A stretch of 64,000 bases of DNA, from positions 62,001 to 126,000 of the IMG/VR virus record IMGVR_UViG_3300009181_000033. One strand, given 5' to 3'. This document shows, piece after piece, positions 22,985 to 51,498 of the stretch. The translations under genes and the position numbers were made by a program. A model generated the notes under the pieces. The model saw only the letters and a list, made by a program, of their open reading frames with translations. It did no database searches and was not told where the DNA came from. Positions within the stretch are counted from its first letter, which is position 1. Each line of letters begins with the position of its first letter.

Positions 22985-23048
22985 AAATTTCGAAAACTAT
23001 ATATTGTCGTTCCCCAGCGTTTTAGCAATTTTTAATTTTATTTTTAGA

Positions 23049-23609
23049 TCAACATCCGTCGTCGTCCAACACCTTTTCCCTCATGCGACCCAAAAGGCCA
23101 CCCAGGCCTTCCTTTTTAATGATCCTGTCGAACTGTCTCCGATAATTCTCTGATAAACTCATCCCCTCGAATTCTATGTCAACCACCTTATATCCGCCAT
23201 CCTCATTCCTCAGCCTATAACCAACCTCAACAGGCTCGGCACGAGAACTCCTTGGCGGAACAGCAACTCCCCTAACAAAATCACCCTCGGAAGTCCACGC
23301 AACCTTCCAACCAACGACACCCTTGATGTTTCTCTGATAACTCCTCCTCACCAGAATTCCCATCATCATACGAAACTCAAGGCGCTCAACATCTGTCATC
23401 CCAGACCAGTGGTCATGCATTGCAGACTGCGCCATCGCCTCGTAATCAACCACCTCGTCAAGCACAAGCAACAAAGCAGTCGGATTCTTTGCACTCCTCA
23501 GAATCTCGGAATGCTTGGCAACCACGTACTCCTGGGGAGTCAGGGCAAAAACATCACAAGCAGATAGTCCAACAAAACAAAAAACAAAGGCACACAAGGA
23601 CTTCTTCAT
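23049..23609 (-). CDS. mlaC: MlaC/Ttg2D-like periplasmic phospholipid-binding protein
   Basis: Signal peptide, DYEAMAQ..M..HW, YKVVDIEFEGMSL.ENYRRQF..II. Confidence 0.85.
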   Translation of the reverse strand: MKKSLCAFVFCFVGLSACDVFALTPQEYVVAKHSEILRSAKNPTALLLVLDEVVDYEAMAQSAMHDHWSGMTDVERLEFRMMMGILVRRSYQRNIKGVVGWKVAWTSEGDFVRGVAVPPRSSRAEPVEVGYRLRNEDGGYKVVDIEFEGMSLSENYRRQFDRIIKKEGLGGLLGRMREKVLDDDGC

Positions 23610-23837
23610 GGCACAAATCTATGTTCCTTCAATAAGCATGTATAAAACATTTCATGACATTTTGATCACGAAATAATCACGCAGTCACAGCACCCTTGAG
23701 GCTCGTGCCAAATCCTTCAACAAATTTGATTCGATACGTGAATAACTTTCCTCCCACCGAGCTCACACAAAGCCACCCCTATTTTTTCTCAAATATATTC
23801 ACACACAAAAACTTTAATCTACATATATAGCTTCGTC

Positions 23838-24209
23838 ATGAAGCTACTCAATAAACTCGTTGCCAAAATACACGAAATAAAGAAGTCACACCTCAGGTCA
23901 CCACAATGGGACGAAGTCAGGGACGCGTTCGTCAAAAAATACCCGACATGTGCAGCATGCGGCGGCACGGAATCCCTACAAGTCCACCACATAAAACCAT
24001 TCCACCTACATCCGGAATTGGAACTCGACGAGGGTAACCTCATCAGCCTATGCATGGGCGAACACAACTGTCACCTCAACATCGGCCACGGCGACTCATT
24101 CAAATGCTACAACCCGGACGTCGACATCGACTCCGCCCACTTCAGGCTCGGCTCCCCCAACGAGAGAAAATTTATCATAGAAAACGCAAAAAAGAAGCGG
24201 CGCTCCTGA
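23838..24209 (+). CDS. HNH endonuclease
   Basis: CAACG...QVHHI.P...NLISLC...CH. Confidence 0.85.
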   Translation: MKLLNKLVAKIHEIKKSHLRSPQWDEVRDAFVKKYPTCAACGGTESLQVHHIKPFHLHPELELDEGNLISLCMGEHNCHLNIGHGDSFKCYNPDVDIDSAHFRLGSPNERKFIIENAKKKRRS

Positions 24210-24215
24210 GAATAT

Positions 24216-24626
24216 TCACCGCGACCTGAACGCCGGCTTATACCGCTCAACAACCTGAACGTTCTCGCTCTCAACGCCCATCACCTCACGAATAACTCCC
24301 AAGGCACGATCCACGTCAAACGTCTTGCAGCTGAACGCGTCCAAACTAAAGAACCGCTGCAACGGCCACGCATGCACACTCAAATGCGAAGTCGATATAA
24401 CCTGTACCCCGGTTATCCCTCCCTCGTCCTCAAAACACCCCGTCTCACGCACACGCTCGAGCACTTCAGGATCCACAGGAACCTCGTATATCATCGGTCG
24501 ATCCAATGGCTTCATCTCCAGCACATCGGTCAAAGCAGCAAACAATCTCCCTAAACCCGCGCGCGTGAACACAGCAACATCCCGCACACGAGCGTCAACA
24601 ATAATATGCAATCCAGCGTCTTCCAT
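24216..24626 (-). CDS. speD: S-adenosylmethionine decarboxylase proenzyme-like
   Basis: GLHIIVD, GITG...STSHLSVHAWP, LDAFSCK. Confidence 0.85.
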   Translation of the reverse strand: MEDAGLHIIVDARVRDVAVFTRAGLGRLFAALTDVLEMKPLDRPMIYEVPVDPEVLERVRETGCFEDEGGITGVQVISTSHLSVHAWPLQRFFSLDAFSCKTFDVDRALGVIREVMGVESENVQVVERYKPAFRSR

Positions 24627-24720
24627 CAGAAACTCCTTTCAGCGAACACGCATAACTATTCAACAAAAAAGAAAGGGCACCACACATGATGCCCTTCTAA
24701 TCATCTTTTCTAACTTCTAG

Positions 24721-24912
24721 TCACATCATCATAGGATCAATGTCGCCCATTTTCTTGTGAGCAGCCTGAGCCTCAGCCGGCTCATACTCGTGATCATATC
24801 CACAGGTACCACACGCCTCATAATCTGCCGGCACGTCAGCAGGAACTGCACCCATCACACGACTCACTTCTTCTTTAATAATTCTTCTTAATTGTGAAAC
24901 TGTTAATCTCAT
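24721..24912 (-). CDS. small protein with MRLT.SQLRRIIKEE leader
   Basis: Leader motif; CGTCG..H.Y. Confidence 0.7.
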   Translation of the reverse strand: MRLTVSQLRRIIKEEVSRVMGAVPADVPADYEACGTCGYDHEYEPAEAQAAHKKMGDIDPMMM

Positions 24913-25074
24913 CGTATATTTTCTCCCTGCTTGCTTATTGCTTAGTTATATATATTTCATAAAACAAAATGGGGGTTTTTACGCCCCCATTTTTATTAAC
25001 AATATTCCCGGGCTCCCCGGGCGCGCGATCGAGCACCCTTTTACAACCAACATTTTCAAGCTCGATCAATAAGG

Positions 25075-25446
25075 TTAGGCTGACAGCTCTCTTGAACTGA
25101 TCTCATCTGCCAAATTTCTTGAACTTGTTCCAATATAACCAAGAACCTCGCCCAAGGCTCGGGCCGCAGGATTCTTGCCCTCACCGGTCATCTTAAACCC
25201 AGCTGAATCAAGAATGTACCCATAGAGGCCTCGAAGATCCAACTTCCTCGAAAGAGCTCCAACAGCCTTCGGCGTCGACATCAGCTCCTTCGCTGCCTCA
25301 AGAACACCAGGCACATCATGCATCTTCCGTATCACAACAGCCCCTCCCACCGTATCCTCATGCTCACCACCAACATTCTTCATGTCCTCAGACAAACCAA
25401 TCTCTTCCCGAATAATCCGCCTGAGCTGCAACGTCGTCAACTTCAT
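25075..25446 (-). CDS. putative virion protein with MKLTTLQLRRIIREE leader
   Basis: Leader motif; ATAGTTA upstream. Confidence 0.7.
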   Translation of the reverse strand: MKLTTLQLRRIIREEIGLSEDMKNVGGEHEDTVGGAVVIRKMHDVPGVLEAAKELMSTPKAVGALSRKLDLRGLYGYILDSAGFKMTGEGKNPAARALGEVLGYIGTSSRNLADEISSRELSA

Positions 25447-25476
25447 GCCCATAACTATGGACCCCTCCCACAAAAC

Positions 25477-25761
25477 CTAAAACTCTCTCGTCGTACGATA
25501 ATCAAACTCAATCGCACCATCATCGTTCTTGTACGCTATCACTGACACACGCCACTTCTCCCGACCCTCCTCAGCAAACGTATCCGCCATCACCTCAACA
25601 GCATCCATCACATCATCCAACACCCCAGGATCTGTCGTCCACTGTTCCACAAATTCAGACAACGACTGCTCACTCCCCTCAAACATCCCATGCGTACAAT
25701 CCTCACGATGCGAATCCCAAATGTATTGCAACCTCGACATAATAAAATCTTCCTTTCTCAA
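25477..25761 (-). CDS. hypothetical acidic protein
   Basis: ORF with RBS-like GAAAGGA before MSRLQY. Confidence 0.6.
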   Translation of the reverse strand: MRKEDFIMSRLQYIWDSHREDCTHGMFEGSEQSLSEFVEQWTTDPGVLDDVMDAVEVMADTFAEEGREKWRVSVIAYKNDDGAIEFDYRTTREF

Positions 25762-25779
25762 CTCAAATCACACATAAAA

Positions 25780-26050
25780 CAAATTCCAAAAAAAATTTCC
25801 GGGAAATTTTCGAGAATACAACTGACACCAAAAAAACCATCCCACGGAAAATAGCCCGCAAGGCAAAGCAAACGAATGGGAAAAAATCCCCGGGAATTTT
25901 CGAACACCCTTAGCCGCGGCGGTGCTGCAGAAAGCCCACATAGTTCGCATATGGCCGGGGGGCCCCGGGGCTAAAAGGGGCTGTTTTGGGGCTGTTTTTG
26001 GGGCCCACCTGGCTGCATTTAGGCTTATTTTGGCGCCTTTTTGAGGGGGG
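25780..26050. other. strand-skew switch site 1 (C/A-rich to G/T-rich); candidate terminus or origin
   Basis: Non-coding; repeated AAAA(T)..CCGGGAA(A)TTTTCGA; GC palindromes; motifs shared in inverted form with 49285-49523. Confidence 0.55.
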
Positions 26051-26597
26051 CTGGTGGGTTGTTGTGGGGGCTGGAGGAGGCTGGGGGTGGCTGGGGTGTA
26101 TACCATTCGATGTCATCTAGGTTATAGGTATCGAAGAGGGAGGGGGAGTGTGAGGGTAGGGGGATTGAGGATAGGTCGAGTTCGAAGTTGTCGTGCCAAA
26201 TTGCCATAGTTTCGTGGATGTTGTGTGGGGGTGAGGGGAGTGATTCTGGGGGTTGGGTGATTTTGAAGGACTGCATTCTGATAAGTAGGTGGAGATTCCT
26301 TTGTTTCAGCCGAAGATTTTGAAGTAGAGCCAGATGAAGGGTGAGGTGAAGAGGCCGAGGAGGATGATGGAGAGGATTGCGCAGCCTGGGGCTATGGATG
26401 TGGTGCCTTTGCCTTTGTTGGTGATGAGGTCTGTGGCTACGGCGGTTGCGAAGATCTTTCCTGTGTTGCTGGCTTTGAACATGGTGTTTCTCCTTTTTGT
26501 TTGGTTGTGTTTGGAGCGGGATGTCGGTAATGCTCCGACCTTTCGGGCTTGGAAAGCCCGCGCACATCTGTCTATACCAATCCCGCGAATGTGTGGG

Positions 26598-26670
26598 TGG
26601 GGCCGAACGGAATTGAACCGTTAACCTACCGGTTAAAAGCCGGCTGCTCTACCTGTTGAGCTACGGTCCC
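26598..26670 (-). tRNA. tRNA-Lys(TTT), A4-C69 mismatch, no encoded CCA
   Basis: Cloverleaf GGGACCG..CTTTTAA..GTTCAATT. Confidence 0.85.
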
Positions 26671-26764
26671 GGGTGTGTTACTTGGGATCCCCCATATGGA
26701 TCCTTTTCACTTATTCAATAATAAATACAATCTGCTGTTTCCTCGCACATGGGTTGAGGTAACA

Positions 26765-26839
26765 TGGCGACCTCACGGAGACTTGAACTCCGATATCGAC
26801 CTTGAAAGGGTCGAGTCCTGACCTTTAGACGATGAGGCC
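26765..26839 (-). tRNA. tRNA-Glu(TTC)
   Basis: Cloverleaf with CCA. Confidence 0.9.
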
Positions 26840-26869
26840 GTTGTGATTAATTGTCAAGTTAAGTTAGAT

Positions 26870-26960
26870 TGGCGGATTCTCAAGGATTCGAACCTTGGGT
26901 GGGCTATTAACCCACGGCGGTTTTCAAAACCGCTGCCTTAAACCTCTCGGCCAAGAATCC
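26870..26960 (-). tRNA. tRNA-Ser(TGA)
   Basis: Long variable arm, G73, CCA. Confidence 0.92.
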
Positions 26961-27100
26961 ATATGACTTACAGTGTTTCATTTGACTTTCTTAACTTAAT
27001 CTACCGAGTCTTAGTTTTACACCACCAGATTCACATTTTTTCATCCTCAAATCTTATTAGCTAAAAAAGTTAGACTAGCTGTCTAGGTCGTAATATATAT

Positions 27101-27883
27101 ATGATTATGGAACATAAAGATTTTCTGTGTGAGCATTGTGAGCGTGTCTGCAAGAATGCCATGTCGCTATCTCAACATCGTTTAAGATGTGAGAAGAATC
27201 CTGGGAATATTAAAGATAATTTCTATCTACCTTCTAGGAAGGGAAAATACAAGAAAGACAATCCTTCAGAGTTGACGTTGAAGAGGCGAGCTGCTCGAGC
27301 TAGAAAAGTCTTATTTGAGGAGAATGGCTCACTATCTTGCTTGTACTGTGAAAAACTCACCGAGGATTATTCATGTTTAACTGTACATGAATCAATGTGT
27401 CCAAAGAATCCCAACAGAGGAGACAGAAGCCTTAGTGAAGAGACTAAAAAGAAATTATCACTTATCACGAAGGGTAGAAAGATGTCAGATGAGTTTAAGA
27501 CAAAGATTAGTGAGGCAATGAAGCGAGCTATTCTTGAGCATCCTGAATCTTATACGTCATCCAACAGAGGAAGGGTAAAACAGATTATTGTCGATGGAGT
27601 TAAGCTTCATGGTTCATGGGAGGCAACTTTTTATTCCTGGGCAAAAGAAAATAATCTGAATCCTGAAAGGTGTTTGACTGGATTTGATTACTTCTGGAAT
27701 GGGAAGAACAGAAAGTATTTTCCGGATTTTTATCTTCCGAATCTTGATCTTTATGTCGAAGTGAAAGGATATGAGACCGAACAAGATAGAGAAAAATGGA
27801 GACAGTTTCCTGAGAAGATTATTGTTCTAAAAAAAGAAGAGATAAGAAGCATTCTGAAAGGATCTTATTCAATCCGATTTTAA
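27101..27883 (+). CDS. free-standing homing-type endonuclease: Zn-finger repeats, NUMOD3-like helices, PD-(D/E)xK domain
   Basis: CEHC..H..C, SEETKKKLS, YFPDFYLP...YVEVKG; antisense inside the tRNA cluster. Confidence 0.8.
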   Translation: MIMEHKDFLCEHCERVCKNAMSLSQHRLRCEKNPGNIKDNFYLPSRKGKYKKDNPSELTLKRRAARARKVLFEENGSLSCLYCEKLTEDYSCLTVHESMCPKNPNRGDRSLSEETKKKLSLITKGRKMSDEFKTKISEAMKRAILEHPESYTSSNRGRVKQIIVDGVKLHGSWEATFYSWAKENNLNPERCLTGFDYFWNGKNRKYFPDFYLPNLDLYVEVKGYETEQDREKWRQFPEKIIVLKKEEIRSILKGSYSIRF

Positions 27884-27889
27884 AGAGTT

Positions 27890-27967
27890 TGGTGGAACGG
27901 GTGGGACTCGAACCCACACATGTCCGGTTATGAGCCGGGTAATCTGAACCAATTGATTTACCGTTCC
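27890..27967 (-). tRNA. tRNA(CAT), Met or Ile2
   Basis: Cloverleaf, CTCATAA loop, AATC/GATT D-stem, CCA. Confidence 0.85.
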
Positions 27968-27978
27968 ATTTAGAGATT

Positions 27979-28056
27979 TGGTGGGACAGGAGGGACTCGA
28001 ACCCCCACATGTTCGCTTATGAGGCGACTAATCTGAACCTATTGATTTACTGTCCC
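27979..28056 (-). tRNA. tRNA(CAT), Met or Ile2, tandem paralogue
   Basis: Same D-arm as the neighbour with covarying stems, CCA. Confidence 0.85.
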
Positions 28057-28067
28057 ATTTTAGTATT

Positions 28068-28144
28068 TGGCACCCCCAGATGGATTCGAACCACCGACCG
28101 GTCGGGTAGAAACCGACAGCTCTAATCCGCTGAGCTATGGGGGC
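28068..28144 (-). tRNA. tRNA-Arg(TCT)
   Basis: Cloverleaf, CCA. Confidence 0.9.
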
Positions 28145-28169
28145 GTGTTGTGTTTTCTTTTGTGATTTT

Positions 28170-28254
28170 TGGTGGAAGGTGATGGATTCGAACCATCGAA
28201 GGCGGTGCCGGCAGATTTACAGTCTGCTCCCTTTAGCCACTCGGGAAACCTTCC
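28170..28254 (-). tRNA. tRNA-Tyr(GTA)
   Basis: Long variable arm, CCA. Confidence 0.92.
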
Positions 28255-28285
28255 TTGGAGACGTTACGTTGATTATCAAAGAACG

Positions 28286-28371
28286 TGGTACCAGGGACGG
28301 GACTCGAACCCGTACGACTGTGAGGTCCGCGGATTTTAAGTCCGCTGCGTATACCATTCCGCCACCCTGGC
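28286..28371 (-). tRNA. tRNA-Leu(TAA)
   Basis: Long variable arm, CCA. Confidence 0.92.
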
Positions 28372-28417
28372 AAGGTGAGGGACCTATTGTGACCGGGTCC
28401 CTGGGCGGTGTATTTAT

Positions 28418-28738
28418 TTACTTAGTTTTGGTCTTGGTCGCCGTTGGTGTCTTCTTGGTGGGTGTTGTCTTCTCGAGGAGGACTGGAACGACCTGTGCGT
28501 AGTAGGATGATGGGACGTCAGGTCGACGATGGTTGATGTTGGAGGCGCATGAGGCAGCCTTGGATCGTGAGTAGAAGATCTGGGCTTCGGCCTTGACAGA
28601 CCAGATTCCACGGAGTCGACCGGAGTATGCACGGCGGTTGAGGAACTTGCCTGCGTTTGCCTCCCGCACGATGTAGGCGGTGTAGTACTTGTCCATGTCG
28701 ATGTCTGAGGCGAACTGCTGCGTCTTGGTGTTATTCAT
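28418..28738 (-). CDS. hypothetical protein
   Basis: Promoter-like GTAAATC..TATAA upstream, hairpin downstream. Confidence 0.65.
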   Translation of the reverse strand: MNNTKTQQFASDIDMDKYYTAYIVREANAGKFLNRRAYSGRLRGIWSVKAEAQIFYSRSKAASCASNINHRRPDVPSSYYAQVVPVLLEKTTPTKKTPTATKTKTK

Positions 28739-28798
28739 GTTGTTTATATTATTCTTTCCTTGGCTGGATTTACAAACTATTTTTTGGGGTGGAATCTG

Positions 28799-29014
28799 TT
28801 AGGCTGCGAGGATTGTGGCGGTGTTGGAGGCGATGTGTTTGGCGTTGTCGTTGGTGGTGATGATGGCTTCTTGTGAGTTTGAGAAGAAGATGTTGTTGCG
28901 TGGGTCGATGATGGGGTCGATGTGGATGATGGGGAGGAAGGATCCTGAGGGAGTGAGGATGACTTGACCGATTTGGAGGGAGCTGACCTTGGTGGTTGTT
29001 GTGTTGTTGCTCAT
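28799..29014 (-). CDS. hypothetical protein (LQIGQVI)
   Basis: ORF track; KOW-like start. Confidence 0.55.
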   Translation of the reverse strand: MSNNTTTTKVSSLQIGQVILTPSGSFLPIIHIDPIIDPRNNIFFSNSQEAIITTNDNAKHIASNTATILAA

Positions 29015-29038
29015 GGTGGGTATAAGTATGTTGATTTT

Positions 29039-29112
29039 GAGCCACCTGTCGGAATCGAACCGACGACCTACGGGTTAAAAGCCCGCTGCTCTACCGACTG
29101 AGATACAGTCCC
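29039..29112 (-). pseudogene. chimeric tRNA: Lys(TTT) 5' half fused to the 3' half of a GCCACCT/AGGTGGC (Thr-type) tRNA
   Basis: Acceptor strands GGGACTG and AGGTGGC do not pair; AGGTGGC pairs with GCCACCT at 29774-29780. Confidence 0.8.
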
Positions 29113-29148
29113 ATGACGTCAATCTAAGCGAGGCGACCCCAGTGGGAA

Positions 29149-29232
29149 TGGAGCCTGAGGTCAGATTCGAACTGACGTGGGTTACCCGCCGCGTTACAAA
29201 TGCGGTCCAATCGACCTCTATGGGACTCAGGC
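29149..29232 (-). tRNA. tRNA-Thr(TGT) with atypical long variable arm
   Basis: GCCTGAG/CTCAGGC, TTTGTAA loop, GGGTAACCC extra arm, T73-CCA. Confidence 0.8.
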
Positions 29233-29703
29233 TTGATTCTTGAATTCTCTGTTACCTTTTCTTATTCGTGTTGATGTTTTTTCTTTTGATGATCTTCCCC
29301 AATTTCTAAAGTTAGGTGTTAGTGCGTGACAGTTAGGACATAATACTCTAAGATTTTCTTTTGTATTATTAGTATGATTACCGTCGATATGATCGATTTC
29401 TAGAATTGTCTGTCCATTATCTCGTGTCTTATTATAACCGCATTGAGAACAAGTATTATTCGCTTCTTGCAATAATCGTTCTCGTCGTTTACCGTAACCC
29501 AGCTTTTCAAAAGGAACCGAAGACCAATCAGTATAAGAATGTTGATTCTTTGCTTCTTTACCTCTTCTCGACTTCATTGCTTCGTAAAAAGCTTCTGTCT
29601 TGGGAGGAACAGCAATCCTATCAGGGTTTTCCTTACAGTGCCTTTCATGATATTTCAATCCTCTTTTTCCACATTCTCTTGAACAATATTTACATGTATC
29701 CAT
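29227..29703 (-). CDS. HNH homing endonuclease
   Basis: CSQCG, LEIDHIDGN..NN..ENLRVLCPNCH; stop codon lies inside tRNA-Thr. Confidence 0.9.
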   Translation of the reverse strand: MDTCKYCSRECGKRGLKYHERHCKENPDRIAVPPKTEAFYEAMKSRRGKEAKNQHSYTDWSSVPFEKLGYGKRRERLLQEANNTCSQCGYNKTRDNGQTILEIDHIDGNHTNNTKENLRVLCPNCHALTPNFRNWGRSSKEKTSTRIRKGNREFKNQA

Positions 29704-29747
29704 ATTACTAAGTATTAGTTACATGCAACCGTTGACCAAAAAAAGTG

Positions 29748-29780
29748 AAACCGTTGCTCTACCAGCTGAGCTAAGGTGGC
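29748..29780 (-). pseudogene. orphan tRNA 5' half (Thr-type), broken in the anticodon loop
   Basis: GCCACCTTAGCTCAGCTGGTAGAGCAACGGTTT followed by unrelated sequence. Confidence 0.8.
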
Positions 29781-44228: not shown

Positions 44229-44948
44229 ATGAAGACGAAGAAGAGCACCGACGAGCTGGAAAACGACGACTTCATCATCGAATCCCCCGCCGGAGAATCC
44301 TCCGACGACTGGGACACCGTCTCCGATAACGTTCCACGCTCCATGCTCGGAGCTCCTTCAAAGGATCGATCAGCCTCACGACCGGACATCTCCAAGCTCC
44401 CCAGCGGAATCGGACCTGACGGAATCCCAACCTTCGTGCGAGGTGACAAGGTCGTCATCGAACGATACTCCGGAGCACTCAAGGGTCACCCGTACCTCGA
44501 CACCCGTACCTACGTCATCCAGAACGTAGACACGGTCACCGGAAAGATCACCATGTACGACGCCGCCCAAGGCCAGTTCGCCACCGACAACTGGAAGGCC
44601 GGACTGCAGAACGGCAACGTCTACAAGCTAGCCAAGAATACCACCATCGATCTCTCCTCCAAGCGCAAGCGCGGTCGTCCCCGCAAGAACCCCGACGCTC
44701 CCACCAACGTCGCCAAGCCCCCTCCCGCCCTCGACGCCAACGGCATGCCCGTCGTCAAGAAGCGCGGCCGTCCCGCAGGCTCAAAGAACCGTCCCAAGGA
44801 AGTCATCATCAACGAAAAGCGGGCAAAGAAGGACGCACGATTCTTCAAGCGCTACGCCAAGCACCCTTCCTCCCACCAACAGAAGGCCGATCCCAAGTGG
44901 ATCTTCCTCCTCCCCATGGTCGACCTCCTCAAGGTCCTCACCAGGTAA
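44229..44948 (+). CDS. AT-hook (HMGA-like) DNA-binding protein
   Basis: Acidic N-terminus; KRKRGRPRK and KKRGRPAGSKNRPK; promoter at 44193-44228. Confidence 0.75.
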   Translation: MKTKKSTDELENDDFIIESPAGESSDDWDTVSDNVPRSMLGAPSKDRSASRPDISKLPSGIGPDGIPTFVRGDKVVIERYSGALKGHPYLDTRTYVIQNVDTVTGKITMYDAAQGQFATDNWKAGLQNGNVYKLAKNTTIDLSSKRKRGRPRKNPDAPTNVAKPPPALDANGMPVVKKRGRPAGSKNRPKEVIINEKRAKKDARFFKRYAKHPSSHQQKADPKWIFLLPMVDLLKVLTR

Positions 44949-44951
44949 CCC

Positions 44952-45227
44952 ATGCAAGGCTCACTCTGGCGGGTGAAGATGCATGTCTACGGACACACCT
45001 TCAATGGGAACGGTGACATGTTCCTCTTGAAGCCAGGTGAGCTCGTCGTTGTAGGAGACGGAATGGTTCAAGGCGACATGCTAGGGTGGGCAGACTCACA
45101 ATTCAGACCATTCGATCGAAAACTCGTGAACGCCCATCTGTGGGTCAAGGTGCTCCTACCACGCCAGTGTTGGATGAATCGGACATACTTCAACCGTGAT
45201 TCCATGTGGCTGGATAGGGTCTCATGA
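44952..45227 (+). CDS. SH3-like small protein
   Basis: KPGELVV...WVKVL. Confidence 0.6.
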   Translation: MQGSLWRVKMHVYGHTFNGNGDMFLLKPGELVVVGDGMVQGDMLGWADSQFRPFDRKLVNAHLWVKVLLPRQCWMNRTYFNRDSMWLDRVS

Positions 45228-45439
45228 GGAGGTTCGAGGCGGGCGACTTGATCACCCTGAAATATGCGTACGCTTACTCCCCATCATCGATCGCACCCGC
45301 AATCGTACTCGAGGTCATTCGAGGTGGATACAAGGTGCTCTTCCCAAACGGCGTCTACGAACTCAGCTCAGACTACGCCCACGAATCATGCCAACTTCTT
45401 CAAGATTTCGGTGCAAAGTCAACATTCGCTGAAGTATAA
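45224..45439 (+). CDS. MKPGD-like small protein
   Basis: FEAGDLI...IVLE...YKVLFPNG. Confidence 0.65.
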   Translation: MRRFEAGDLITLKYAYAYSPSSIAPAIVLEVIRGGYKVLFPNGVYELSSDYAHESCQLLQDFGAKSTFAEV

Positions 45440-45473
45440 CTGAATTGAAGGTGAGGAAAGGAAGGGCAAGAAC

Positions 45474-45773
45474 GTGAACAAGAACGTGAACAACTTCGTC
45501 GTCCAGGTTATCGAGCACTACAACGACCGCGGCGGTGACGGTGGCATGGCCACGACCATCGTCGGTGTGGTGAAGACCCTCGAGGCGGGCATGCAGATGC
45601 TCGATGATATGGGTGCCAAGGAAGGCCGAGTCCTTCAGATCTTCCCTCCCATGGTCCGCGAGGACGGACGGCTCGTCCCTGGTCCGCCCGACGTCTTCCC
45701 TTACTGTGCTCCTCCTCAGAAGAAGGCCCGTGGCAAGAAGATCGCTGCGGATGTAGCCGAAACTGCTGAGTGA
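45474..45773 (+). CDS. hypothetical protein
   Basis: Promoter at ~45410 and RBS. Confidence 0.6.
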   Translation: MNKNVNNFVVQVIEHYNDRGGDGGMATTIVGVVKTLEAGMQMLDDMGAKEGRVLQIFPPMVREDGRLVPGPPDVFPYCAPPQKKARGKKIAADVAETAE

Positions 45774-46039
45774 GAAAATCTGACGGACAGTGAAAAGCTC
45801 AACATCAAAAGGAGTATAACAGGATCATGAACGAATTCAGTCACGCGGAACTGCGGCTCATCCTCGAAGGCCTTGATGTCGTCCGTGAACGGATGCGGGA
45901 AGATATCAGTGTCAACCTCAACCTCGGCGAGGAAGAGTACAACCAGGTGGTCAGGCTCCAAGACAAGATCATCGAGGCCCTGGAATCTCGCTGCTTCTAC
46001 TGAGTATAAAGTCAACACCCTCTGGAGTATAACTGAATC

Positions 46040-46408
46040 ATGAAGGGCATGAAGAAGGTTGTCACCCTCCCAGCCGGAACCAAATACCACTGGAATCGCT
46101 CACCAGAAGAAGTAAAAGATATCTACAGTCGACTCCCTCCACTCGATGACGCCGGCGAACCCACCATCGTCAACTCCACAGGCACCTCCCACCTCAATGA
46201 ACCAACGATAGTCACCATCACCAAAACACGTAAGATCGACTGGCACTCCTGGTTCAATAAACCCAAATTCCTCGTCGAAGGGCTAACCACCATCAACGGA
46301 AACCCAAAAATCATCATGTTCTCCCTACCCCCCAACGAGTTCTTCCGCCTCGAGGAAGAGGAAGTCATCGTTAACGCCTCGCGAGTCCGCCGGCCCGTGG
46401 CACGCTGA
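46040..46408 (+). CDS. hypothetical protein, paralogue of 46808-47167
   Basis: PAGT.Y, D.AGEP, WFNKP, TING.P shared. Confidence 0.75.
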   Translation: MKGMKKVVTLPAGTKYHWNRSPEEVKDIYSRLPPLDDAGEPTIVNSTGTSHLNEPTIVTITKTRKIDWHSWFNKPKFLVEGLTTINGNPKIIMFSLPPNEFFRLEEEEVIVNASRVRRPVAR

Positions 46409-46417
46409 ACTTCGCCA

Positions 46418-46453
46418 GTGCAAAGTCAACATCAAAAGGAGTATAATAGAATC
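46418..46453 (+). promoter_or_regulatory. consensus leaderless promoter GTGCAA-N18-TATAAT-N6-ATG
   Basis: Perfect -10 box; near-identical copies at ~45790 and 47135. Confidence 0.8.
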
Positions 46454-46618
46454 ATGGTCAGCAAGGATAAGCAGGCACAGGTTGCTCAGGACGCTCTCTA
46501 CGAGATTGGTTGGGAGATGACTCCTGCCGAGGCTCGTGAGCAGCTCGATTTCTTCGCGAAGATGAGCATTGATATTTGGCTTCAATCTGGTCAGACGGAC
46601 CAATTTGCTTGGGAGTGA
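46454..46618 (+). CDS. hypothetical protein
   Basis: Start reassigned to MVSKDK. Confidence 0.6.
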   Translation: MVSKDKQAQVAQDALYEIGWEMTPAEAREQLDFFAKMSIDIWLQSGQTDQFAWE

Positions 46619-46767
46619 TCATGACATTATACGATGTTGTTTATACTAATTCGTTGGGAATTCGCCAGCTCACCGTTGTATCTTCTTTGGTGATTAAAGA
46701 GACGATTGCTCTTTATTCTCGTGAAGGTGGAGTGATTTTTTCGATCAAGCAGCGGACATAACCGCTT

Positions 46768-46809
46768 GGGACTGTAGCACAATGGCAGTGCAGCTGGCTT
46801 TTAACCAGT
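46768..46809 (+). pseudogene. tRNA-Lys(TTT) 5' half without T arm
   Basis: GGGACTGTAGCACAATGGCAGTGCAGCTGGCTTTTAACCAGT followed by coding sequence. Confidence 0.8.
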
Positions 46810-47167
46810 GGCTCAACGGCTACGACCTGTGAAAGCAAGGGAGACGATCGTCATTCCGGCGGGCACCACGTACTACTACACCCGCACCAAGGAAGAGTGC
46901 GAAGACATCCGCCAACGTGACATCGCAACCGGCAACAACTACGACTCGGCAGGCGAACCAAAAATCTACAGCCGAATCACATCCAGCCGAATCCAAGAAA
47001 ACACCTTCTGCACGATCATCAAGAACCGCAACATCGAGTGGGACACTTGGTTCAATAAGCCATCCCACCTCCTCGAGGTGCTAGCAACGATAAACGGCGC
47101 ACCAAGAATTATTTTAGTCAAAGACCCACGCCGGGTGCAAAGTCAACATCAAAAGGAGTTTAACTAA
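46808..47167 (+). CDS. hypothetical protein, paralogue of 46040-46408
   Basis: Shared motifs. Confidence 0.7.
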   Translation: MAQRLRPVKARETIVIPAGTTYYYTRTKEECEDIRQRDIATGNNYDSAGEPKIYSRITSSRIQENTFCTIIKNRNIEWDTWFNKPSHLLEVLATINGAPRIILVKDPRRVQSQHQKEFN

Positions 47168-47170
47168 ACT

Positions 47171-47668
47171 ATGAACGCTGAACAACTCAAGGAGATTCTC
47201 CACCACCATGCCCTCTGGATCCTCAACCCCGAAGAGGGTTGCAGAGCGAATCTGAGTGGAGCGAATCTGAGCGGAGCGAATCTGTTCAGGGCGAATCTGA
47301 GCGAAGCGTTTCTGTGCGAAGCGTTTCTGTGGGGAGCGTATCTGAACGGAGCGTATCTGAACGGAGCTGATCTGAGTGGAGCGGATCTGAGCAGAGCGAA
47401 TCTGTGGGAAGCGAATCTGTTCAGGGCGTATCTGTGGGAAGCGAATCTGAGTGGAGCGAATCTGAGCGGAGCGAATCTGAGCAGAGCGAATCTGAGTGGA
47501 GCGAATCTGAGTGGAGCCGATCTGCGCGGAGCCGATCTGCTGGATGCAAAGTTCACAGTGGAACTGAAGGACGCAAGAAATCTTCACGCCGTTGTTTACC
47601 ATCCACAACAATTGCCATTTTTGGCACTGAACCCTAGTTTCCTGGAATCTGTGCAAAGTTCCACCTGA
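47171..47668 (+). CDS. pentapeptide repeat protein
   Basis: About 21 A(N/D/Y/F)LXX units encoded by a 15-bp tandem repeat. Confidence 0.95.
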   Translation: MNAEQLKEILHHHALWILNPEEGCRANLSGANLSGANLFRANLSEAFLCEAFLWGAYLNGAYLNGADLSGADLSRANLWEANLFRAYLWEANLSGANLSGANLSRANLSGANLSGADLRGADLLDAKFTVELKDARNLHAVVYHPQQLPFLALNPSFLESVQSST

Positions 47669-47686
47669 AAGAGGTATAACTAAACC

Positions 47687-47884
47687 ATGAACAACGACAC
47701 GATCCGAGGTCTCTCCCCCTACGCCGACTTTAAACACGCTGATCTCGTCCGAAGCTCGCGATTGGCGGCGATCGTCAATTCAGCCGCTTCCAAGGGCCAC
47801 AAGGTCCGTCACGACATTGCCGAGGCTTTGGCCATGGAGCTCGAGTACCTCGCTCTTAACTTCGACCTGGTGCCGAAGAAGTGA
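47687..47884 (+). CDS. hypothetical protein, paralogue of 48079-48267
   Basis: LEYL.LNFDLVPKK shared; promoter at 47651. Confidence 0.7.
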   Translation: MNNDTIRGLSPYADFKHADLVRSSRLAAIVNSAASKGHKVRHDIAEALAMELEYLALNFDLVPKK

Positions 47885-48078
47885 CTCGAACGGTGCAAAG
47901 TTCGCCTGAGAAAGGATATACTAGGACCATGGAACAAGATTGGGAACAAGACCTGCAGTACCTTCCCGACCCCAATGAACACGCCAAGGAATGCTGGGAG
48001 TGGTTCAGGGACGCGATCGAGACACTCGACGTCACAGAAGCGGTGCAAAGTTCAACCGAGAAGTGATAGGATAGAACC

Positions 48079-48267
48079 ATGAGCAACGACAAGTCCCACC
48101 TCCATCCCGACCTCCACGATGCCTCCCTCGAGAAGGCCTGCAAGATGGCCAATGGCCTCACCCACACGGCCCACAAGAGCCGCACCACGGTCGAGAGCGA
48201 TGCCGCCGACCTCCACTACATGCTCGAATACCTCAGACTTAACTTTGACCTCGTCCCGAAGAAGTGA
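48079..48267 (+). CDS. hypothetical protein, paralogue of 47687-47884
   Basis: Promoter at 48043. Confidence 0.7.
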   Translation: MSNDKSHLHPDLHDASLEKACKMANGLTHTAHKSRTTVESDAADLHYMLEYLRLNFDLVPKK

Positions 48268-48276
48268 GGAACAACC

Positions 48277-48483
48277 ATGAACATAACAGATGAATTTGTC
48301 ATCCACCGGGCCAAACGAACCAACTCCGGCGCCTACATCCTCCTCTGCAACCTTCCACAGAACGAAGTAACTCCCTGGGTCACCTGGTACTCGGAAGATA
48401 TCACAGGCACACACAGGATCAACGGCAACTACTTCTACTCAGATGAAGCAGCAGACGCCTTCAAGGACTTCGAGGAGAGATAA
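48277..48483 (+). CDS. hypothetical protein (PWVTW..GNYF..A.KDF.ER)
   Basis: RBS GAGGA. Confidence 0.7.
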   Translation: MNITDEFVIHRAKRTNSGAYILLCNLPQNEVTPWVTWYSEDITGTHRINGNYFYSDEAADAFKDFEER

Positions 48484-48489
48484 ACCACA

Positions 48490-48729
48490 ATGCCCCTACT
48501 ACTAGTCGCAGCCATCGCAATCGCCATCGCCTACTTCTCCCCCCGCGCCGCCAACATCATCGCAGGCCTAATCACATTCGGCTTCATCGTCCCATTCTAC
48601 ACATTCGGCGGAGGCACATTCATCTGGACCATCACCACCCTCTGCGGACTATCCATCCCATACATCATCTGCTGCTTCGGCGGACTAATCATCGGCTCCC
48701 TCCTCGCCATGGCCATCTACTCAGAATAA
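48490..48729 (+). CDS. small membrane protein
   Basis: Hydrophobic; architecture similar to 9563-9910. Confidence 0.6.
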   Translation: MPLLLVAAIAIAIAYFSPRAANIIAGLITFGFIVPFYTFGGGTFIWTITTLCGLSIPYIICCFGGLIIGSLLAMAIYSE

Positions 48730-48736
48730 ATACACC

Positions 48737-49081
48737 ATGCCCTTCCCTCCAATCGGCTCCCTCTGGCATGCAATCCCCAACTCCCAAGAAATCTTCGCCT
48801 ACCCAATCGGCCCATCATCCAACATCACCACCATCAGAAATCACCACACCATCCTCGTACTAAAACACCCCGACCCTCGCCACACCACAAACTCATCCCC
48901 CAATAACCCAAAAGGCCTCATCAACGTAATCGTCTTCCCCGAAACACTCCACGCCACCATCTTCTCCTCCAACTTCCACAACACCCTATCCCCAATCGCC
49001 GGAGAAAACAAAAGCACCCCCACACTCCCCCAGGACAACCAACCCAAAACCGAGACTACTTTTCCCCCAGGGAGAGACTAA
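48737..49081 (+). CDS. hypothetical protein in a C/A-skewed zone
   Basis: PIGSLW start like other SH3-type ORFs. Confidence 0.45.
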   Translation: MPFPPIGSLWHAIPNSQEIFAYPIGPSSNITTIRNHHTILVLKHPDPRHTTNSSPNNPKGLINVIVFPETLHATIFSSNFHNTLSPIAGENKSTPTLPQDNQPKTETTFPPGRD

Positions 49082-49530
49082 CCAAATATCACCCAAAATG
49101 CCCAACACCACACCCACACGCCGTGAGGGCACTTTACCCAACAGAGACTACAATTCCCCCAGGGAGAGACCAACACACCCCACAACCAACACCCCACAAT
49201 GCCCCCACAACACAAGAAAGCATACCCACCAAAAGAACTACTTCTCCCCCAAGGAGAACACAACAACACACACAACACCTAACAAAAAAGGCGCCCAGGG
49301 CAGCGCAAACCGCATAATGAGTTTTTCGAGGAAAAAAACGCATTTTTTTCACTTTTTTTTGGGACTTAGTCATCGCCGGCCCGATAGTGCGCTTTTTGCC
49401 ACCCTGGGCGCAATTGTCTCCTGCTAGCCTCGTCTCCGGGGCGCTCCAGGCGTGTATGCACGTGCACGCTTGTGGGGGCCGTGGGAGGGCATTTGTGGGT
49501 TAGTTGAGTTTCCCGGGGATTTTGTTGGTG
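49050..49530. other. strand-skew switch site 2; candidate terminus or origin
   Basis: Three ACTAC..TCCCCCA(G/A)GGAGA direct repeats, GC palindromes, inverted motifs shared with site 1. Confidence 0.55.
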
Positions 49531-49812
49531 GTGGTGGTGGGTTTGGGGGGGTGATATCTGTTTCGCCCATGGGTTGAGGCTAGGGACGCGTCCCAGTCTA
49601 TGGTGTTGGGGATGATGGGGTGGAGACCTGTGTCTTGGGGTTTTCTTTGTTGTTGAAGTTCTAGTGGGAGAAGTCTTCTGTGGTTTCTATGTTATGTGAT
49701 TAGGGGTGATGGTTGGGTATCTTTTGGGGGTGGGGTGTGGATGAGCGTATTAGTTGGTTTGTTTTTCGTGTTGTGGGGAGCTGGGTTTTTAAGGTTTGTC
49801 ACTCGCTGGTGG

Positions 49813-50070
49813 TTATGTGTCGTCTTTGATTTCTTGGCAGTCTTCGTCTAGTGTTGGGTAGATGAGGGCGTTGAGCATTTTGAGTAGGTCTTCTTGGAGG
49901 TCCCATTTTGAGGAGCCGGATGGGAGGTATTCTTCGGAGTAGTTGGTGATGTTGCCGTGTGTGTTGTGGAAGACTTCTCTGATGGTGAAGATGTATGAGG
50001 GAGGGTGGTTGTTGTCGCCGTCTTCTAGGGTAGACCTGATGATCCTGTATTTTGGGTGTGTTTTTTTCAT
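49813..50070 (-). CDS. hypothetical phage protein
   Basis: YRII...IREVF...G.I...DL.KML.A. Confidence 0.6.
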   Translation of the reverse strand: MKKTHPKYRIIRSTLEDGDNNHPPSYIFTIREVFHNTHGNITNYSEEYLPSGSSKWDLQEDLLKMLNALIYPTLDEDCQEIKDDT

Positions 50071-50133
50071 TGGTGTGTTTGAATTAGAAAATCCTCCTCC
50101 CGGGGTTTTGGAAGGAGGATTGGTGTGGGTGGG

Positions 50134-51372
50134 TTAGGAGATTGTGATTTCTAGTTCGAAGCCGAGGAATTCTATGAGTGATTTCCATCCTGAGTTGGCT
50201 GTTGATTGGAGGGTGGAGATTGCGTATTCGTAGAGGGAGTTGATTTTTTGGGTTGTTTTTTCCCAGAGGGATTGTGCCCAGGAGGAGATTTTTTCCCATG
50301 TGTTGGAGAGGGCTGATTTGGCTGAGTCTTTGGCGGCTTCGATGGAGTCGAAGAATCCTTCTTTGAGGAGTGATTGGTGTTGTGAGATTATTTCTCTGTT
50401 TTCTTTTTTGAGTTTTGAGGAGACGAGTGCTTTGAATTTTTCTGCTTCGTTGAGCATTGCGCCGATGACGTCGTTCATGGAGCGTTGTCCTTTGGTGGAT
50501 TTGCGTGATTTGAACTTGACTTGGATGGAGACGTCGGAGTATTTTTTGGCGAGTGCCGTTGTGATTCTTTTTAGTTCGAATGCTTTTTGGAGGGATGATT
50601 CTTGGTCTTTTGGGTTTGTGCCGGAGATGCCTTTTTTCTTTTTGTCTCCGTAGATTGTGGTGGCGCCTGCTGTGGTGAGGAGCCAGTCTGCATGTCCTTG
50701 TGATTCTTTGCCGAACTTCATGAGTCCGCTCATGGATTCGAAGACGAAGGCGTCTTTTAGTTCTGGGTTGGATTCTGGGTCGAGGATGCTGTCGAGTTCT
50801 GTTTGGATTTCTTCTTGGATTTTTTCTTGTTGGATGAGTTGTTTTTCTTCTTTGGTTTTCCCGCCGGCGGCGTAGCCTGAGCTCTTTCTGATTTCGGAGA
50901 CGTCCATTGAGTATTCGACTCCGCTGCGCATTTTCTTGATTTTTTCTAGGACTTCCCCTGCGTAGCCTGAGGCGTCGTAGCCTGCTATTTCGAGGGCGGC
51001 CATGTAGGTTGCCACGGCTTCTCCTCTCTCGCCCGACATGAATTGTCCTGATCCCATCTTGAGGGATATCTTTTGTCCCCCGATGATGAGGTCTGTCTTT
51101 GGTGTTGGGTTGGTTCCGCCGTTTTCCGACCAGAACTTGGAGACGGGTTGGGCGGCGGGCTTGTTGGCTTCGGGGTCTGGGATGGTGTAGCCGAGGTCCC
51201 CTTGGATTCCCTTTGCTATGGCTTTTGCGAGGGTGTTGAAGTGTTGTGGTTCTTCTCCTTTCGCTGCGTCTATGATGGCTGTTTCCAGTTGTGATGCGGC
51301 GCCTAGTTTGTCTTTGGCCAGGTTTTCTTTGAGGCAGAGCTTGACGTAATTTCTCAGGATGGTTTCGTTCAT
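50134..51372 (-). CDS. putative virion protein with possible PD-(D/E)xK-like domain
   Basis: Leader ILRNYVK..LKE; TPKTDL...ISLK; ATATTTA upstream. Confidence 0.65.
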   Translation of the reverse strand: MNETILRNYVKLCLKENLAKDKLGAASQLETAIIDAAKGEEPQHFNTLAKAIAKGIQGDLGYTIPDPEANKPAAQPVSKFWSENGGTNPTPKTDLIIGGQKISLKMGSGQFMSGERGEAVATYMAALEIAGYDASGYAGEVLEKIKKMRSGVEYSMDVSEIRKSSGYAAGGKTKEEKQLIQQEKIQEEIQTELDSILDPESNPELKDAFVFESMSGLMKFGKESQGHADWLLTTAGATTIYGDKKKKGISGTNPKDQESSLQKAFELKRITTALAKKYSDVSIQVKFKSRKSTKGQRSMNDVIGAMLNEAEKFKALVSSKLKKENREIISQHQSLLKEGFFDSIEAAKDSAKSALSNTWEKISSWAQSLWEKTTQKINSLYEYAISTLQSTANSGWKSLIEFLGFELEITIS

Positions 51373-51498
51373 GATGACATTAAATATGCCATCTTTTTTC
51401 TTTTATTCGCCCGGCCCGAAAAGATGCCATCTCGAACCTTTTCACCTGAAGTTGTTGGTTTAGCGCTGCGGCGGACTTCTTTTGCCTCCGATAATTCA

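What the first reader, a model, noticed from the sequence alone, without database searches (positions are those of the whole stretch)
23000..51400. Two mirror-image strand-skew switch sites bracket a 23.5-kb early-gene block
Seen: the + strand is strongly C/A-rich before and G/T-rich after ~25.9 kb, and the same happens at ~49.4 kb. This holds regardless of gene direction (23838+, 48490+ and 50134- are all affected) and fades over 1-3 kb. Both centres are non-coding and share motifs in inverted order: AAAATCCCCGGGAA (25883-25896; minus strand 49510-49523) and GGCGCCTTTTT (26032-26042; minus strand 49285-49295). Between them, promoter-dense genes diverge from 42.6 kb toward the two sites. Established: T5 and SPO1 keep first-expressed genes in long terminal repeats, and single-stranded exposure gives G/T bias. 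Inference: the sites are the ends of a collapsed long terminal repeat or packaging sites, or twin origins. They are nested inside the adhesin inverted repeat.
Basis: partly seen in the sequence, partly recalled or inferred. Interest (0 to 1): 0.8.

Follow-up and report, generated by a model that had tools for sequence, protein, structure and literature searches.

The report
Twin strand-bias switch sites in jumbo phage
Two short non-coding sites, 23.5 kb apart in a 298-kb freshwater phage genome, are each flanked by DNA whose outward-running strand has been almost stripped of A and C. This is the mark of one strand being single-stranded again and again, most likely where DNA synthesis starts.

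Summary
At about 25.9 kb and 49.4 kb the + strand flips from C/A-rich to G/T-rich. At four-fold-degenerate codon sites the + strand G+T share is 0.25 then 0.97 at site 1, and 0.07 then 0.94 at site 2. It is 0.42-0.60 elsewhere. The bias ignores gene direction, so codon use cannot explain it. It decays over about 10-12 kb and skips the two adhesin paralogs. No comparable switch occurs elsewhere in the window or in about 2 Mb of other viral DNA. Two related phages have one at the end of the same promoter-dense block.

The strand running 5'->3' away from each site is the depleted one, on both sides. That fits outward leading-strand-only DNA synthesis: an R-loop or D-loop origin, a nick, or break-induced replication. 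It is the opposite of what resected genome ends would give. I favour twin initiation zones (confidence 0.45).

The collapsed long-terminal-repeat idea is neither shown nor excluded. Only assembled contigs were available, and the T5 repeat boundary shows no such skew. The block does resemble the T5 and SPO1 early repeat. The shared inverted motifs are real, but relatives carry them without any skew.

The parts
22562..25686 (.). Site 1 outer-left skew zone. The + strand is C/A-rich. It holds minus-strand genes (EamA, MlaC, AdoMetDC, MKLT-family and a 69-aa gene) plus the plus-strand HNH gene.
   Evidence: The + strand G+T share at four-fold sites is 0.25, against 0.17 for HNH alone. Third-position GC skew runs from -0.38 to -0.90.
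25687..26024 (.). Site 1 non-coding centre. It contains an AT-rich stretch with two palindromes AAAATYYCCGGGRAWTTT (25792-25809 and 25883-25900, 90 bp apart). It also has 11-bp-phased GGGGCT(N4-5) repeats and a GC palindrome (25954-26009).
   Evidence: Sequence; repeats; motif search gave 8 hits against 0.13 expected. The module is conserved in relatives L019, L024 and L093.
26032..26098 (+). GGCGCCTTTTT followed by an array of G-runs and GGCTGG repeats. The array includes GCTGGTGG and G-quadruplex motifs.
26025..26482 (.). Site 1 inner skew zone. The + strand is G/T-rich. Two minus-strand genes (83 aa and 58 aa) read toward the site.
   Evidence: G+T share at four-fold sites is 0.97 (71 of 73 sites).
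26512..29232 (-). tRNA array of 10 genes, interrupted by a homing-endonuclease-like gene (27161-27883, +) and by strongly skewed small genes at 28418-29014.
   Evidence: The four-fold G+T share is 0.83 at 28.4-29.0 kb.
29227..42577 (-). Left arm of the promoter-dense block. It holds small ORFs, a DUF2201 peptidase, a KaiC/DnaB-like ATPase and a MoxR ATPase. The G+T share declines from 0.69 to about 0.5 with distance from site 1.
42703..49081 (+). Right arm of the block. The G+T share falls to 0.07 in the last three genes (48277-49081).
49082..49812 (.). Site 2 non-coding centre, built as follows:
- a C/A-rich arm with three 35-nt repeats starting at 49048, 49140 and 49230 (the first overlaps the end of ORF 48737-49081);
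- GGCGCCTTTTT on the minus strand (49285-49295);
- an inverted repeat (49291-49314 / 49388-49411) around an AT-rich core;
- the palindrome on the minus strand (49506-49523);
- a G/T-rich arm with a G-quadruplex motif (49474-49499).
49813..51372 (.). Site 2 outer-right skew zone. The + strand is G/T-rich. Minus-strand genes (85 aa and 412 aa) read toward the site.
   Evidence: G+T share at four-fold sites is 0.94. The 32%-identical ortholog in L005 sits in DNA without any switch.
19176..22241 (-). Left adhesin paralog (LamG and beta-propeller domains) with a 57-nt downstream repeat. It is not skewed.
51424..54793 (+). Right adhesin paralog (43% identical, with a near-identical N-terminus) and the inverted copy of the 57-nt repeat. 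It is not skewed.

Best explanation
Each site is a fixed start point of outward DNA synthesis in which only the leading strand is made at first. The parental or nascent strand that runs 5'->3' away from the site therefore stays single-stranded for a long time, on both sides.

Single-stranded DNA loses amino bases by deamination (C->T, A->G). Over evolutionary time that strand has become almost pure G+T at unconstrained positions, whatever genes lie there. The effect decays with distance, as it does on the displaced strand of vertebrate mitochondrial DNA.

The two sites are inverted copies of one regulatory module at the two ends of a promoter-dense, probably early, gene block. The most likely reading is a pair of replication-initiation zones.

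What is shown:
- the strand bias, its independence of gene direction, its gradient and its rarity;
- the inverted motifs;
- the presence of a comparable switch in two relatives.

What is inferred:
- that the cause is single-strandedness;
- that the process is DNA replication;
- that it starts at the sites. Whether the trigger is an R-loop, a nick or a double-strand break cannot be told.
For: 1. Sign. On both sides of both sites the strand running 5'->3' away from the site is G/T-rich. This is the leading-strand or displaced-strand sign of replication origins and of the mitochondrial H strand (established knowledge: Lobry and Grigoriev skew; mtDNA deamination gradients).

2. The bias is mutational rather than coding. 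It is strongest at four-fold sites (0.94-1.00 or 0.00-0.08 G+T) and in non-coding arms. It has the same + strand sign in genes of either direction.

3. Both C and A are depleted, as expected for deamination of single strands. No TC-context signature of an APOBEC-like enzyme is seen.

4. There is a gradient. Within one run of same-direction genes the G+T share falls 0.97, 0.83, 0.69, 0.63-0.66, 0.59, then about 0.5 over about 12 kb. Weaker skew of the same sign persists to 13.9 kb on the left and 57.8 kb on the right.

5. The pattern is patchy. Genes that look recently acquired are little or not skewed, as expected for slow mutational build-up. These are the adhesins, the homing endonuclease 27161-27883 and the pentapeptide protein.

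6. The centres have origin-like furniture: AT-rich cores, phased repeats, palindromes, and G-run or G-quadruplex arrays on the outward strand.

7. Related phages show the same three-part layout at an end of the same block: a C/A-rich arm, an AT-rich hairpin core and a G/T-rich arm. These are L025/L026 and L020/L021. In the L020 phage the site-1 ortholog lies 26.6 kb away.

8. Nothing comparable is found in about 2 Mb of control viral DNA.
Against: - No direct evidence of replication initiation exists. No initiator, helicase-loader or polymerase gene was recognised next to the sites.
- Only 64 kb of the 298 kb was read. It is unknown whether this is the genome-wide skew minimum or whether other such sites exist.
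- The site-1 motif module exists in relatives L019 and L024 with no skew, and in L093 with weak skew. The closest relative by MoxR shows no switch in 37 kb. The module is therefore not sufficient, and the process is lineage-specific.
- Most flanking genes point toward the sites, which would be head-on to outward forks.
- Two origins only 23.5 kb apart is unusual.
Confidence: 0.45

Rival explanations
1. The 23.5-kb block is a long direct terminal repeat, as in T5 or SPO1, collapsed by the assembler. The sites are its boundaries, meaning the physical genome ends or terminase cut sites. The skew would come from end-related single-strandedness. Nick-and-displace duplication of the repeat would expose the inner flanks. 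End invasion with bubble-migration synthesis would expose the outer flanks.
For: - The block looks like a T5-type repeat: dense promoters, small genes, and two divergent arms running to non-coding, repeat-rich boundaries.
- Both assemblies are circular permutations, which is what a collapsed repeat would give.
- Block size is conserved in a relative, at about 26.6 kb.
- A combination of two known end processes can reproduce all four signs (inference).
- Contig depths in X2 and X3 are somewhat higher inside than outside.
Against: - It needs two separate mechanisms. Each alone explains only half of the flanks.
- Plain 5'->3' resection or 3' overhangs give the wrong sign.
- The T5 repeat boundary at 10,219 shows no skew switch.
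- Depth in X4 is not higher inside, and one contig crosses site 1 at a single depth.
- Direct-repeat boundaries have no need for inverted symmetry, yet the motifs are inverted.
Confidence: 0.2
2. Strong outward, partly non-coding transcription starts at the palindromic module in each centre. It forms long R-loops on the G-rich non-template strand and exposes that strand. No role in replication is needed.
For: - The conserved module at site 1 lies just upstream of the outward MKLT-family genes in every relative, so it may be a promoter or operator.
- The same module points outward at site 2.
- G-runs and G-quadruplex motifs lie on the would-be non-template strand.
- GC skew of this sign is known to favour R-loops (PMC3787257, abstract seen).
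Against: - In three of the four flanks the transcript would have to be antisense to every annotated gene, and across tRNA genes.
- No sigma-70-like outward promoter was found.
- On the left, the skew continues past two strong terminators at 24.97 and 24.67 kb.
- Transcription alone is not known to give about 95% bias at silent sites.
Confidence: 0.12
3. The composition is selected, not mutational. C-rich, G-poor RNA tails would act as Rho-loading sites and insulators at the ends of the block's operons. Alternatively, G-rich DNA would serve as a structural or Chi-like signal.
For: - Three of the four flanks give C-rich, G-poor RNA running into hairpin-plus-T-run terminators in the centres.
- GGCTGG repeats including GCTGGTGG lie right of site 1.
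Against: - The bias fills silent sites of whole genes for kilobases and follows position, not the sense strand.
- The site 1 left arm and the left arms in L026 and L020 have no gene reading into them.
- The outer-left genes have the opposite, G/T-rich, sense strand.
Confidence: 0.08
4. The pattern is a by-product of mosaic gene origin, codon usage or assembly error.
For: The block has a higher G+C content (0.50-0.60) than its surroundings (0.40-0.45). Inside the block, far from the sites, sense strands prefer C at third positions, so part of the inner GC skew follows gene direction.
Against: - Two JGI assemblies, an IMG/VR contig from another sample and a Logan contig agree. The Logan contig matches base for base across site 1.
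- Opposite-strand neighbours share the + strand bias.
- The switch falls in non-coding DNA, twice, and again in relatives.
Confidence: 0.03

Closest known systems
GC/AT-skew switch at bacterial and phage replication origins (cumulative-skew minimum)
   Same: The sign is the same: the leading or outward strand has G>C and T>A. The switch is independent of gene direction and lies in an AT-rich non-coding region with repeats.
   Different: The bias here is local, saturating at about 95% at silent sites and decaying over about 10 kb. It is not a weak genome-wide step. There are two sites 23.5 kb apart. Genome-wide behaviour was not seen.
Strand-displacement deamination gradient of vertebrate mitochondrial DNA (H strand, D-loop)
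   Same: One strand becomes G+T-rich through loss of C and A. The magnitude at four-fold sites is comparable, and the gradient follows the time spent single-stranded.
   Different: The pattern here is bidirectional around each site. The genome is a 298-kb double-stranded DNA phage. No evidence exists for asynchronous replication or a stable D-loop.
Long terminal repeats of T5 (10.2 kb) and SPO1 (13.2 kb) carrying the first-expressed genes
   Same: A block of small, promoter-dense genes in two divergent arms ends in non-coding, repeat-rich boundaries.
   Different: Repetition of the block is not shown here. T5 has no skew switch at its repeat boundary. The boundary motifs here are inverted.
Paired origins in inverted repeats (herpes simplex oriS in the repeats flanking US; chloroplast oriA and oriB in the inverted repeat, with D-loop deamination gradients)
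   Same: Two inverted copies of an origin-like element bracket a segment. They are nested in a larger inverted duplication, here the adhesin paralogs. This comparison is from memory and was not tested.
   Different: The inverted copies here share only short motifs, not a long identical repeat. No origin-binding protein was identified.
R-loop-prone GC-skewed zones (CpG-island promoters and terminators, immunoglobulin switch regions, T4 oriF/oriG, ColE1)
   Same: The non-template or outward strand is G-rich and G-clustered next to an AT-rich element. This bias sign favours RNA:DNA hybrids.
   Different: No promoter or transcript was shown. The skew extends through kilobases of coding DNA.

Membership tests
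Replication origin marked by compositional skew | GC skew changes from negative to positive along the strand, with the opposite change in AT skew | tested here: met
   at both sites.
Replication origin marked by compositional skew | The skew is independent of gene direction (seen at silent sites of genes on both strands) | tested here: met
   HNH (+) matches its minus-strand neighbours. Minus-strand genes on opposite sides of the sites have opposite bias.
Replication origin marked by compositional skew | The site is the minimum of cumulative skew for the whole replicon, with a terminus opposite | not testable with these tools
   Only 64 kb of the 297,894-bp contig could be read. Walking the contig gives 10 kb per look-up.
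Replication origin marked by compositional skew | AT-rich unwinding element plus repeated initiator-binding sites, and an initiator gene nearby | tested here: inconclusive
   AT-rich cores, phased repeats and palindromes are present. No initiator was recognised.
Replication origin marked by compositional skew | Initiation demonstrated physically (marker frequency, nascent strands, 2D gels) | not testable with these tools
   No raw reads or cultures were available.
Long direct terminal repeat (T5/SPO1 type) | About twofold read depth across the repeat | tested here: inconclusive
   One search returned only Logan contig mean depths. X2 and X3 are somewhat higher inside; X4 is not.
Long direct terminal repeat (T5/SPO1 type) | Read starts and ends pile up at the boundaries | not testable with these tools
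   One search had no raw reads, and table 6 was empty.
Long direct terminal repeat (T5/SPO1 type) | First-expressed genes with strong promoters lie inside the repeat | tested here: inconclusive
   The architecture matches T5. The timing of expression is not known.
mtDNA-type strand-displacement deamination gradient | Loss of C and A from one strand at four-fold sites | tested here: met
   For example, 0 A, 12 C, 108 G and 70 T at the four-fold sites of 50134-51372.
mtDNA-type strand-displacement deamination gradient | A monotonic gradient with distance from the start site | tested here: met
   with exceptions at genes that look recently acquired.
mtDNA-type strand-displacement deamination gradient | Asynchronous (leading-strand-first) replication | not testable with these tools
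   Requires experiment.
Rho-dependent terminator (rut) region | A C-rich, G-poor transcript from a gene reading into the region | tested here: not met
   Met for three flanks. The site 1 left arm and the L026 and L020 left arms have no gene reading in.

The most novel reading that the evidence does not exclude
The phage keeps stable displaced-strand structures at two fixed sites flanking its first-expressed genes. These would be D-loops or R-loops like the mitochondrial 7S D-loop, possibly already present in packaged DNA. Kilobases of one strand would then be single-stranded for much of the phage's life. These structures would prime replication, or possibly drive early expression, immediately after entry. 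If so, this is a mode of genome organisation not described for tailed phages.
Probability: 0.1. Interest if true: 0.9.

Novelty: new variant of a known kind. Interest (0 to 1): 0.68.

Why it matters
Origins and replication modes of uncultured jumbo phages are essentially unknown. They are usually guessed from weak genome-wide skew. Here the genome itself carries a saturated, kilobase-scale footprint that marks two exact sites and gives the polarity of the process.

If the footprint is a record of single-strandedness, several things follow:
- It gives a purely computational way to find start sites of DNA synthesis, or terminal-repeat boundaries, in metagenomic phage genomes.
- It shows that local mutation pressure can rewrite the codon and amino-acid usage of whole phage genes.
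- It allows relative dating of gene acquisitions, because unskewed genes inside skewed zones would be recent arrivals.

Tried and rejected
- **Read-level test of the terminal repeat.** All 24 runs are kept only as Logan contigs, and the single read-laying run gave contig mean depths only. The result is inconclusive.
- **Close cultured relatives.** None were found in INPHARED by DNA or protein search.
- **Function of the genes next to the sites.** Pfam and PHROGs returned nothing relevant to replication or packaging.
- **Rfam.** Only tRNAs were found.
- **A phage deaminase as the cause.** A dCMP/cytidine-deaminase-like gene lies at the end of the arm in relative L093. It has no homolog in the window or in the other relatives. 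No TC-context depletion is seen. Rejected.
- **Rho-loading (rut) explanation.** Rejected as sufficient; see the rival explanations.
- **Contig ends of relatives as termini.** The ends fall in ordinary high-GC coding DNA or at promoter repeats, not at skew arms.
- **Survey of site-1 orthologs.** A profile search with the MKLT-family proteins found only the source contig. A DNA pattern for the site-1 module found only four known contigs.
- **Reaching other parts of the genome through dispersed TnpB copies.** No further copy exists in this genome.
- **Collection scan with the promoter box.** Hits were mostly chance matches, so they were used as negative-control DNA.
- **Literature.** Two full-text searches found no description of such local saturated skew in phages.
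- **Fold of the centres.** The call failed on a length limit and was not repeated.

Full report
**What the window is**

The window is positions 62,001-126,000 of a 297,894-bp contig from a freshwater-lake metagenome (JGI Ga0114969_10000001, also IMGVR_UViG_3300009181_000033). A second assembly of 297,898 bp starts at window position 37,570 and overlaps itself by about 127 bp. The assemblies are therefore circular permutations.

The sequence carries 11 tRNA genes, TnpB genes, homing endonucleases and auxiliary genes, and looks like a jumbo phage. It has no close cultured relative.

**The observation**

Across about 25.9 kb and about 49.4 kb the + strand changes from C/A-rich to G/T-rich.

- The left/right difference in G+T share in 600-bp windows is 0.37 and 0.49 at the two sites. 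The rest of the window has sd 0.046 and a maximum of 0.153.
- About 2 Mb of other viral DNA never exceeds 0.18 in 500-bp windows.
- The bias is concentrated at third codon positions.

The + strand G+T share at four-fold-degenerate sites is:

| Region | G+T share |
|---|---|
| 22.56-25.69 kb (site 1 outer-left) | 0.25 |
| 26.0-26.5 kb (site 1 inner) | 0.97 |
| 48.28-49.08 kb (site 2 inner) | 0.07 |
| 49.8-51.4 kb (site 2 outer-right) | 0.94 |
| Other regions tabulated outside these zones | 0.42-0.60 |

The bias follows position, not gene direction. The plus-strand HNH gene (23838-24209) has the same + strand bias as its minus-strand neighbours. Minus-strand genes left of site 1 and right of site 2 have opposite biases.

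**Shape of the signal**

The bias is saturated next to the centres and in their non-coding arms.

- Inside the block, within one run of minus-strand genes, it declines 0.97, 0.83, 0.69, about 0.65, 0.59, then about 0.5 over about 12 kb. A mirror-image decline occurs toward site 2.
- Outside the block it is interrupted by the two adhesin paralogs, which are unskewed. It continues more weakly to about 13.9 kb on the left and about 57.8 kb on the right.
- A homing-endonuclease gene in the tRNA array and a pentapeptide-repeat gene are also little skewed.

This patchiness is what a slow mutational pressure acting on a mosaic genome would give.

Both C and A are depleted from the same strand. Overall composition of that strand is A 18%, C 15%, G 34%, T 32%. 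There is no TC-context signature.

**Anatomy**

Both centres are non-coding in the JGI gene calls.

Site 1 (25687-26024) contains:
- an AT-rich stretch with two near-palindromes 90 bp apart;
- 11-bp-phased GGGGCT repeats and a GC palindrome;
- then GGCGCCTTTTT and an array of G-runs and GGCTGG repeats.

Site 2 (49082-49812) contains:
- a C/A-rich arm with three 35-nt repeats about 90 bp apart;
- an inverted repeat around an AT-rich core;
- one copy of the palindrome, and a G/T-rich arm.

A third shared motif, CCGTGGGAKGG, lies at a similar distance from the palindrome.

Between the sites, about 15 copies of a box GTGCAAAGTCAACA upstream of a TATAAT-like hexamer point leftward left of 42.6 kb and rightward right of it, as do the genes. 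Adhesin paralogs (43% identical) and a 57-nt near-perfect inverted repeat bracket the whole 35.6-kb region.

**Relatives**

MoxR homologs retrieved 80 loci. Among the closer ones (64-75% identity):

- Two phages (L025/L026 and L020/L021) have the same three-part layout at one end of the same divergent block: C/A-rich arm, AT-rich hairpin core, G/T-rich arm. Their differences in G+T share are about 0.28-0.34.
- In the L020 phage the ortholog of site 1 was found 26.6 kb away. It has the same GC-repeat and palindrome module but only a weak switch.
- In L019 and L024 the same module precedes the conserved MKLT-family genes with no skew at all.
- The closest relative by MoxR identity shows no switch in 37 kb.

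The motif module is therefore a conserved regulatory element, probably a terminator plus operator or promoter. The skew-generating process is a separate, lineage-variable feature located at it.

**Mechanism**

On both sides of both sites the G/T-rich strand is the one that runs 5'->3' away from the site. Deamination of C and A in single-stranded DNA makes a strand G/T-rich. That is the established basis of origin skew and of the mitochondrial H-strand gradient. The outward 5'->3' strand must therefore be the exposed one.

Processes that fit this polarity:
- Outward DNA synthesis in which lagging-strand synthesis is delayed. This could be an R-loop or D-loop origin, nick-primed displacement, or break-induced bubble-migration synthesis from a site-specific break.

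Processes that do not fit, or fit only in part:
- It is the opposite of what 5'->3' resection or 3' overhangs at genome ends would give.
- A T7-type nick-and-displace duplication of a terminal repeat reproduces only the inner flanks.
- End invasion from repeat termini reproduces only the outer flanks.
- Sense transcription predicts the wrong sign in three of four flanks.
- Rho-loading tails fail where no gene reads into the arm.

A single bidirectional initiation process at each site is the most economical account. I hold it at 0.45. The terminal-repeat boundary model is the main rival at 0.20.

**The terminal-repeat question**

The architecture matches T5, where divergent pre-early arms fill the 10.2-kb repeat. 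However, the T5 boundary shows no skew switch.

The decisive data, read depth and read ends, were not obtainable. All runs are stored as contigs. One 10,293-bp contig crosses site 1 at a mean depth of 22.9. The fragmentary depths in three other runs disagree with each other.

**Novelty**

Compositional skew at origins and deamination gradients on displaced strands are known. A pair of local, saturated, bidirectional skew zones at fixed sites in a tailed-phage genome is something I could not find described. These zones rewrite silent sites, and partly the amino-acid content, of whole genes, and they recur in relatives. I rate it a new variant of a known kind.

Noticed in passing
window 1651-2832 (+) and 12597-13688 (-); L105: Two TnpB (IS605 OrfB / Cas12f-like) genes are present. 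A 92%-identical copy of the second lies in a related phage contig whose MoxR is only 75% identical. This suggests recent transfer of the element between phages.
   Followed up: partly
window 26512-29232, 35554-35628, 29048-29105, 46775-46819: An array of 10 tRNA genes sits directly inside site 1, and a further tRNA-Lys lies deep in the block. Rfam also finds a partial tRNA at 29048-29105. A tRNA-Lys-like fragment lies on the opposite strand at 46775-46819.
   Followed up: no
window 23838-24209 (+) and 27101-27883 (+): Two homing-endonuclease-like genes (HNH; NUMOD3/DUF7487) lie on the strand opposite to their neighbours. The first is fully skewed like its surroundings. The second is only weakly skewed, as if inserted more recently.
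   Followed up: partly
window 22562-24626 and 56716-57804: Host-like auxiliary genes are present: an EamA-family transporter fragment, an MlaC lipid-binding protein with a signal peptide, S-adenosylmethionine decarboxylase, and a full DnaJ.
   Followed up: no
window 24721-24912 and 25075-25452; L019 928-2003; L024 719-2192: A family of proteins begins with MKLTxxQLRRIIKEE. They occur as tandem paralogs and always lie directly downstream of the site-1 module in every relative examined. No database family matches them.
   Followed up: partly
window 49048-49320: Three 35-nt repeats lie at 90-92 bp spacing. Repeats 2 and 3 are exactly 30 codons apart and in frame with an uncalled ORF (49098-49427). 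They may be the remains of a repeat protein decaying under the mutation pressure rather than binding sites.
   Followed up: partly
window 47171-47668; 47687-47884 and 48079-48267: A pentapeptide-repeat protein (165 aa) lies in the right arm. Next to it are two small paralogous genes ending in LNFDLVPKK, each preceded by a copy of the promoter repeat.
   Followed up: no
window 26042-26098: Four GGCTGG repeats occur within 50 bp. They include GCTGGTGG, the E. coli Chi sequence, on the outward strand. That is the orientation Chi has on leading strands in bacteria. The host is unknown, so this may be coincidence.
   Followed up: no
window 29500-49500: The block between the sites has a markedly higher G+C content (0.50-0.60) than the rest of the window (0.40-0.45). 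Relatives' blocks reach 0.6-0.7.
   Followed up: no
L093 17167-17568: A small dCMP/cytidine-deaminase-like gene is the last gene of the arm just before the site-1 ortholog in a related phage. It is absent from the window phage.
   Followed up: yes
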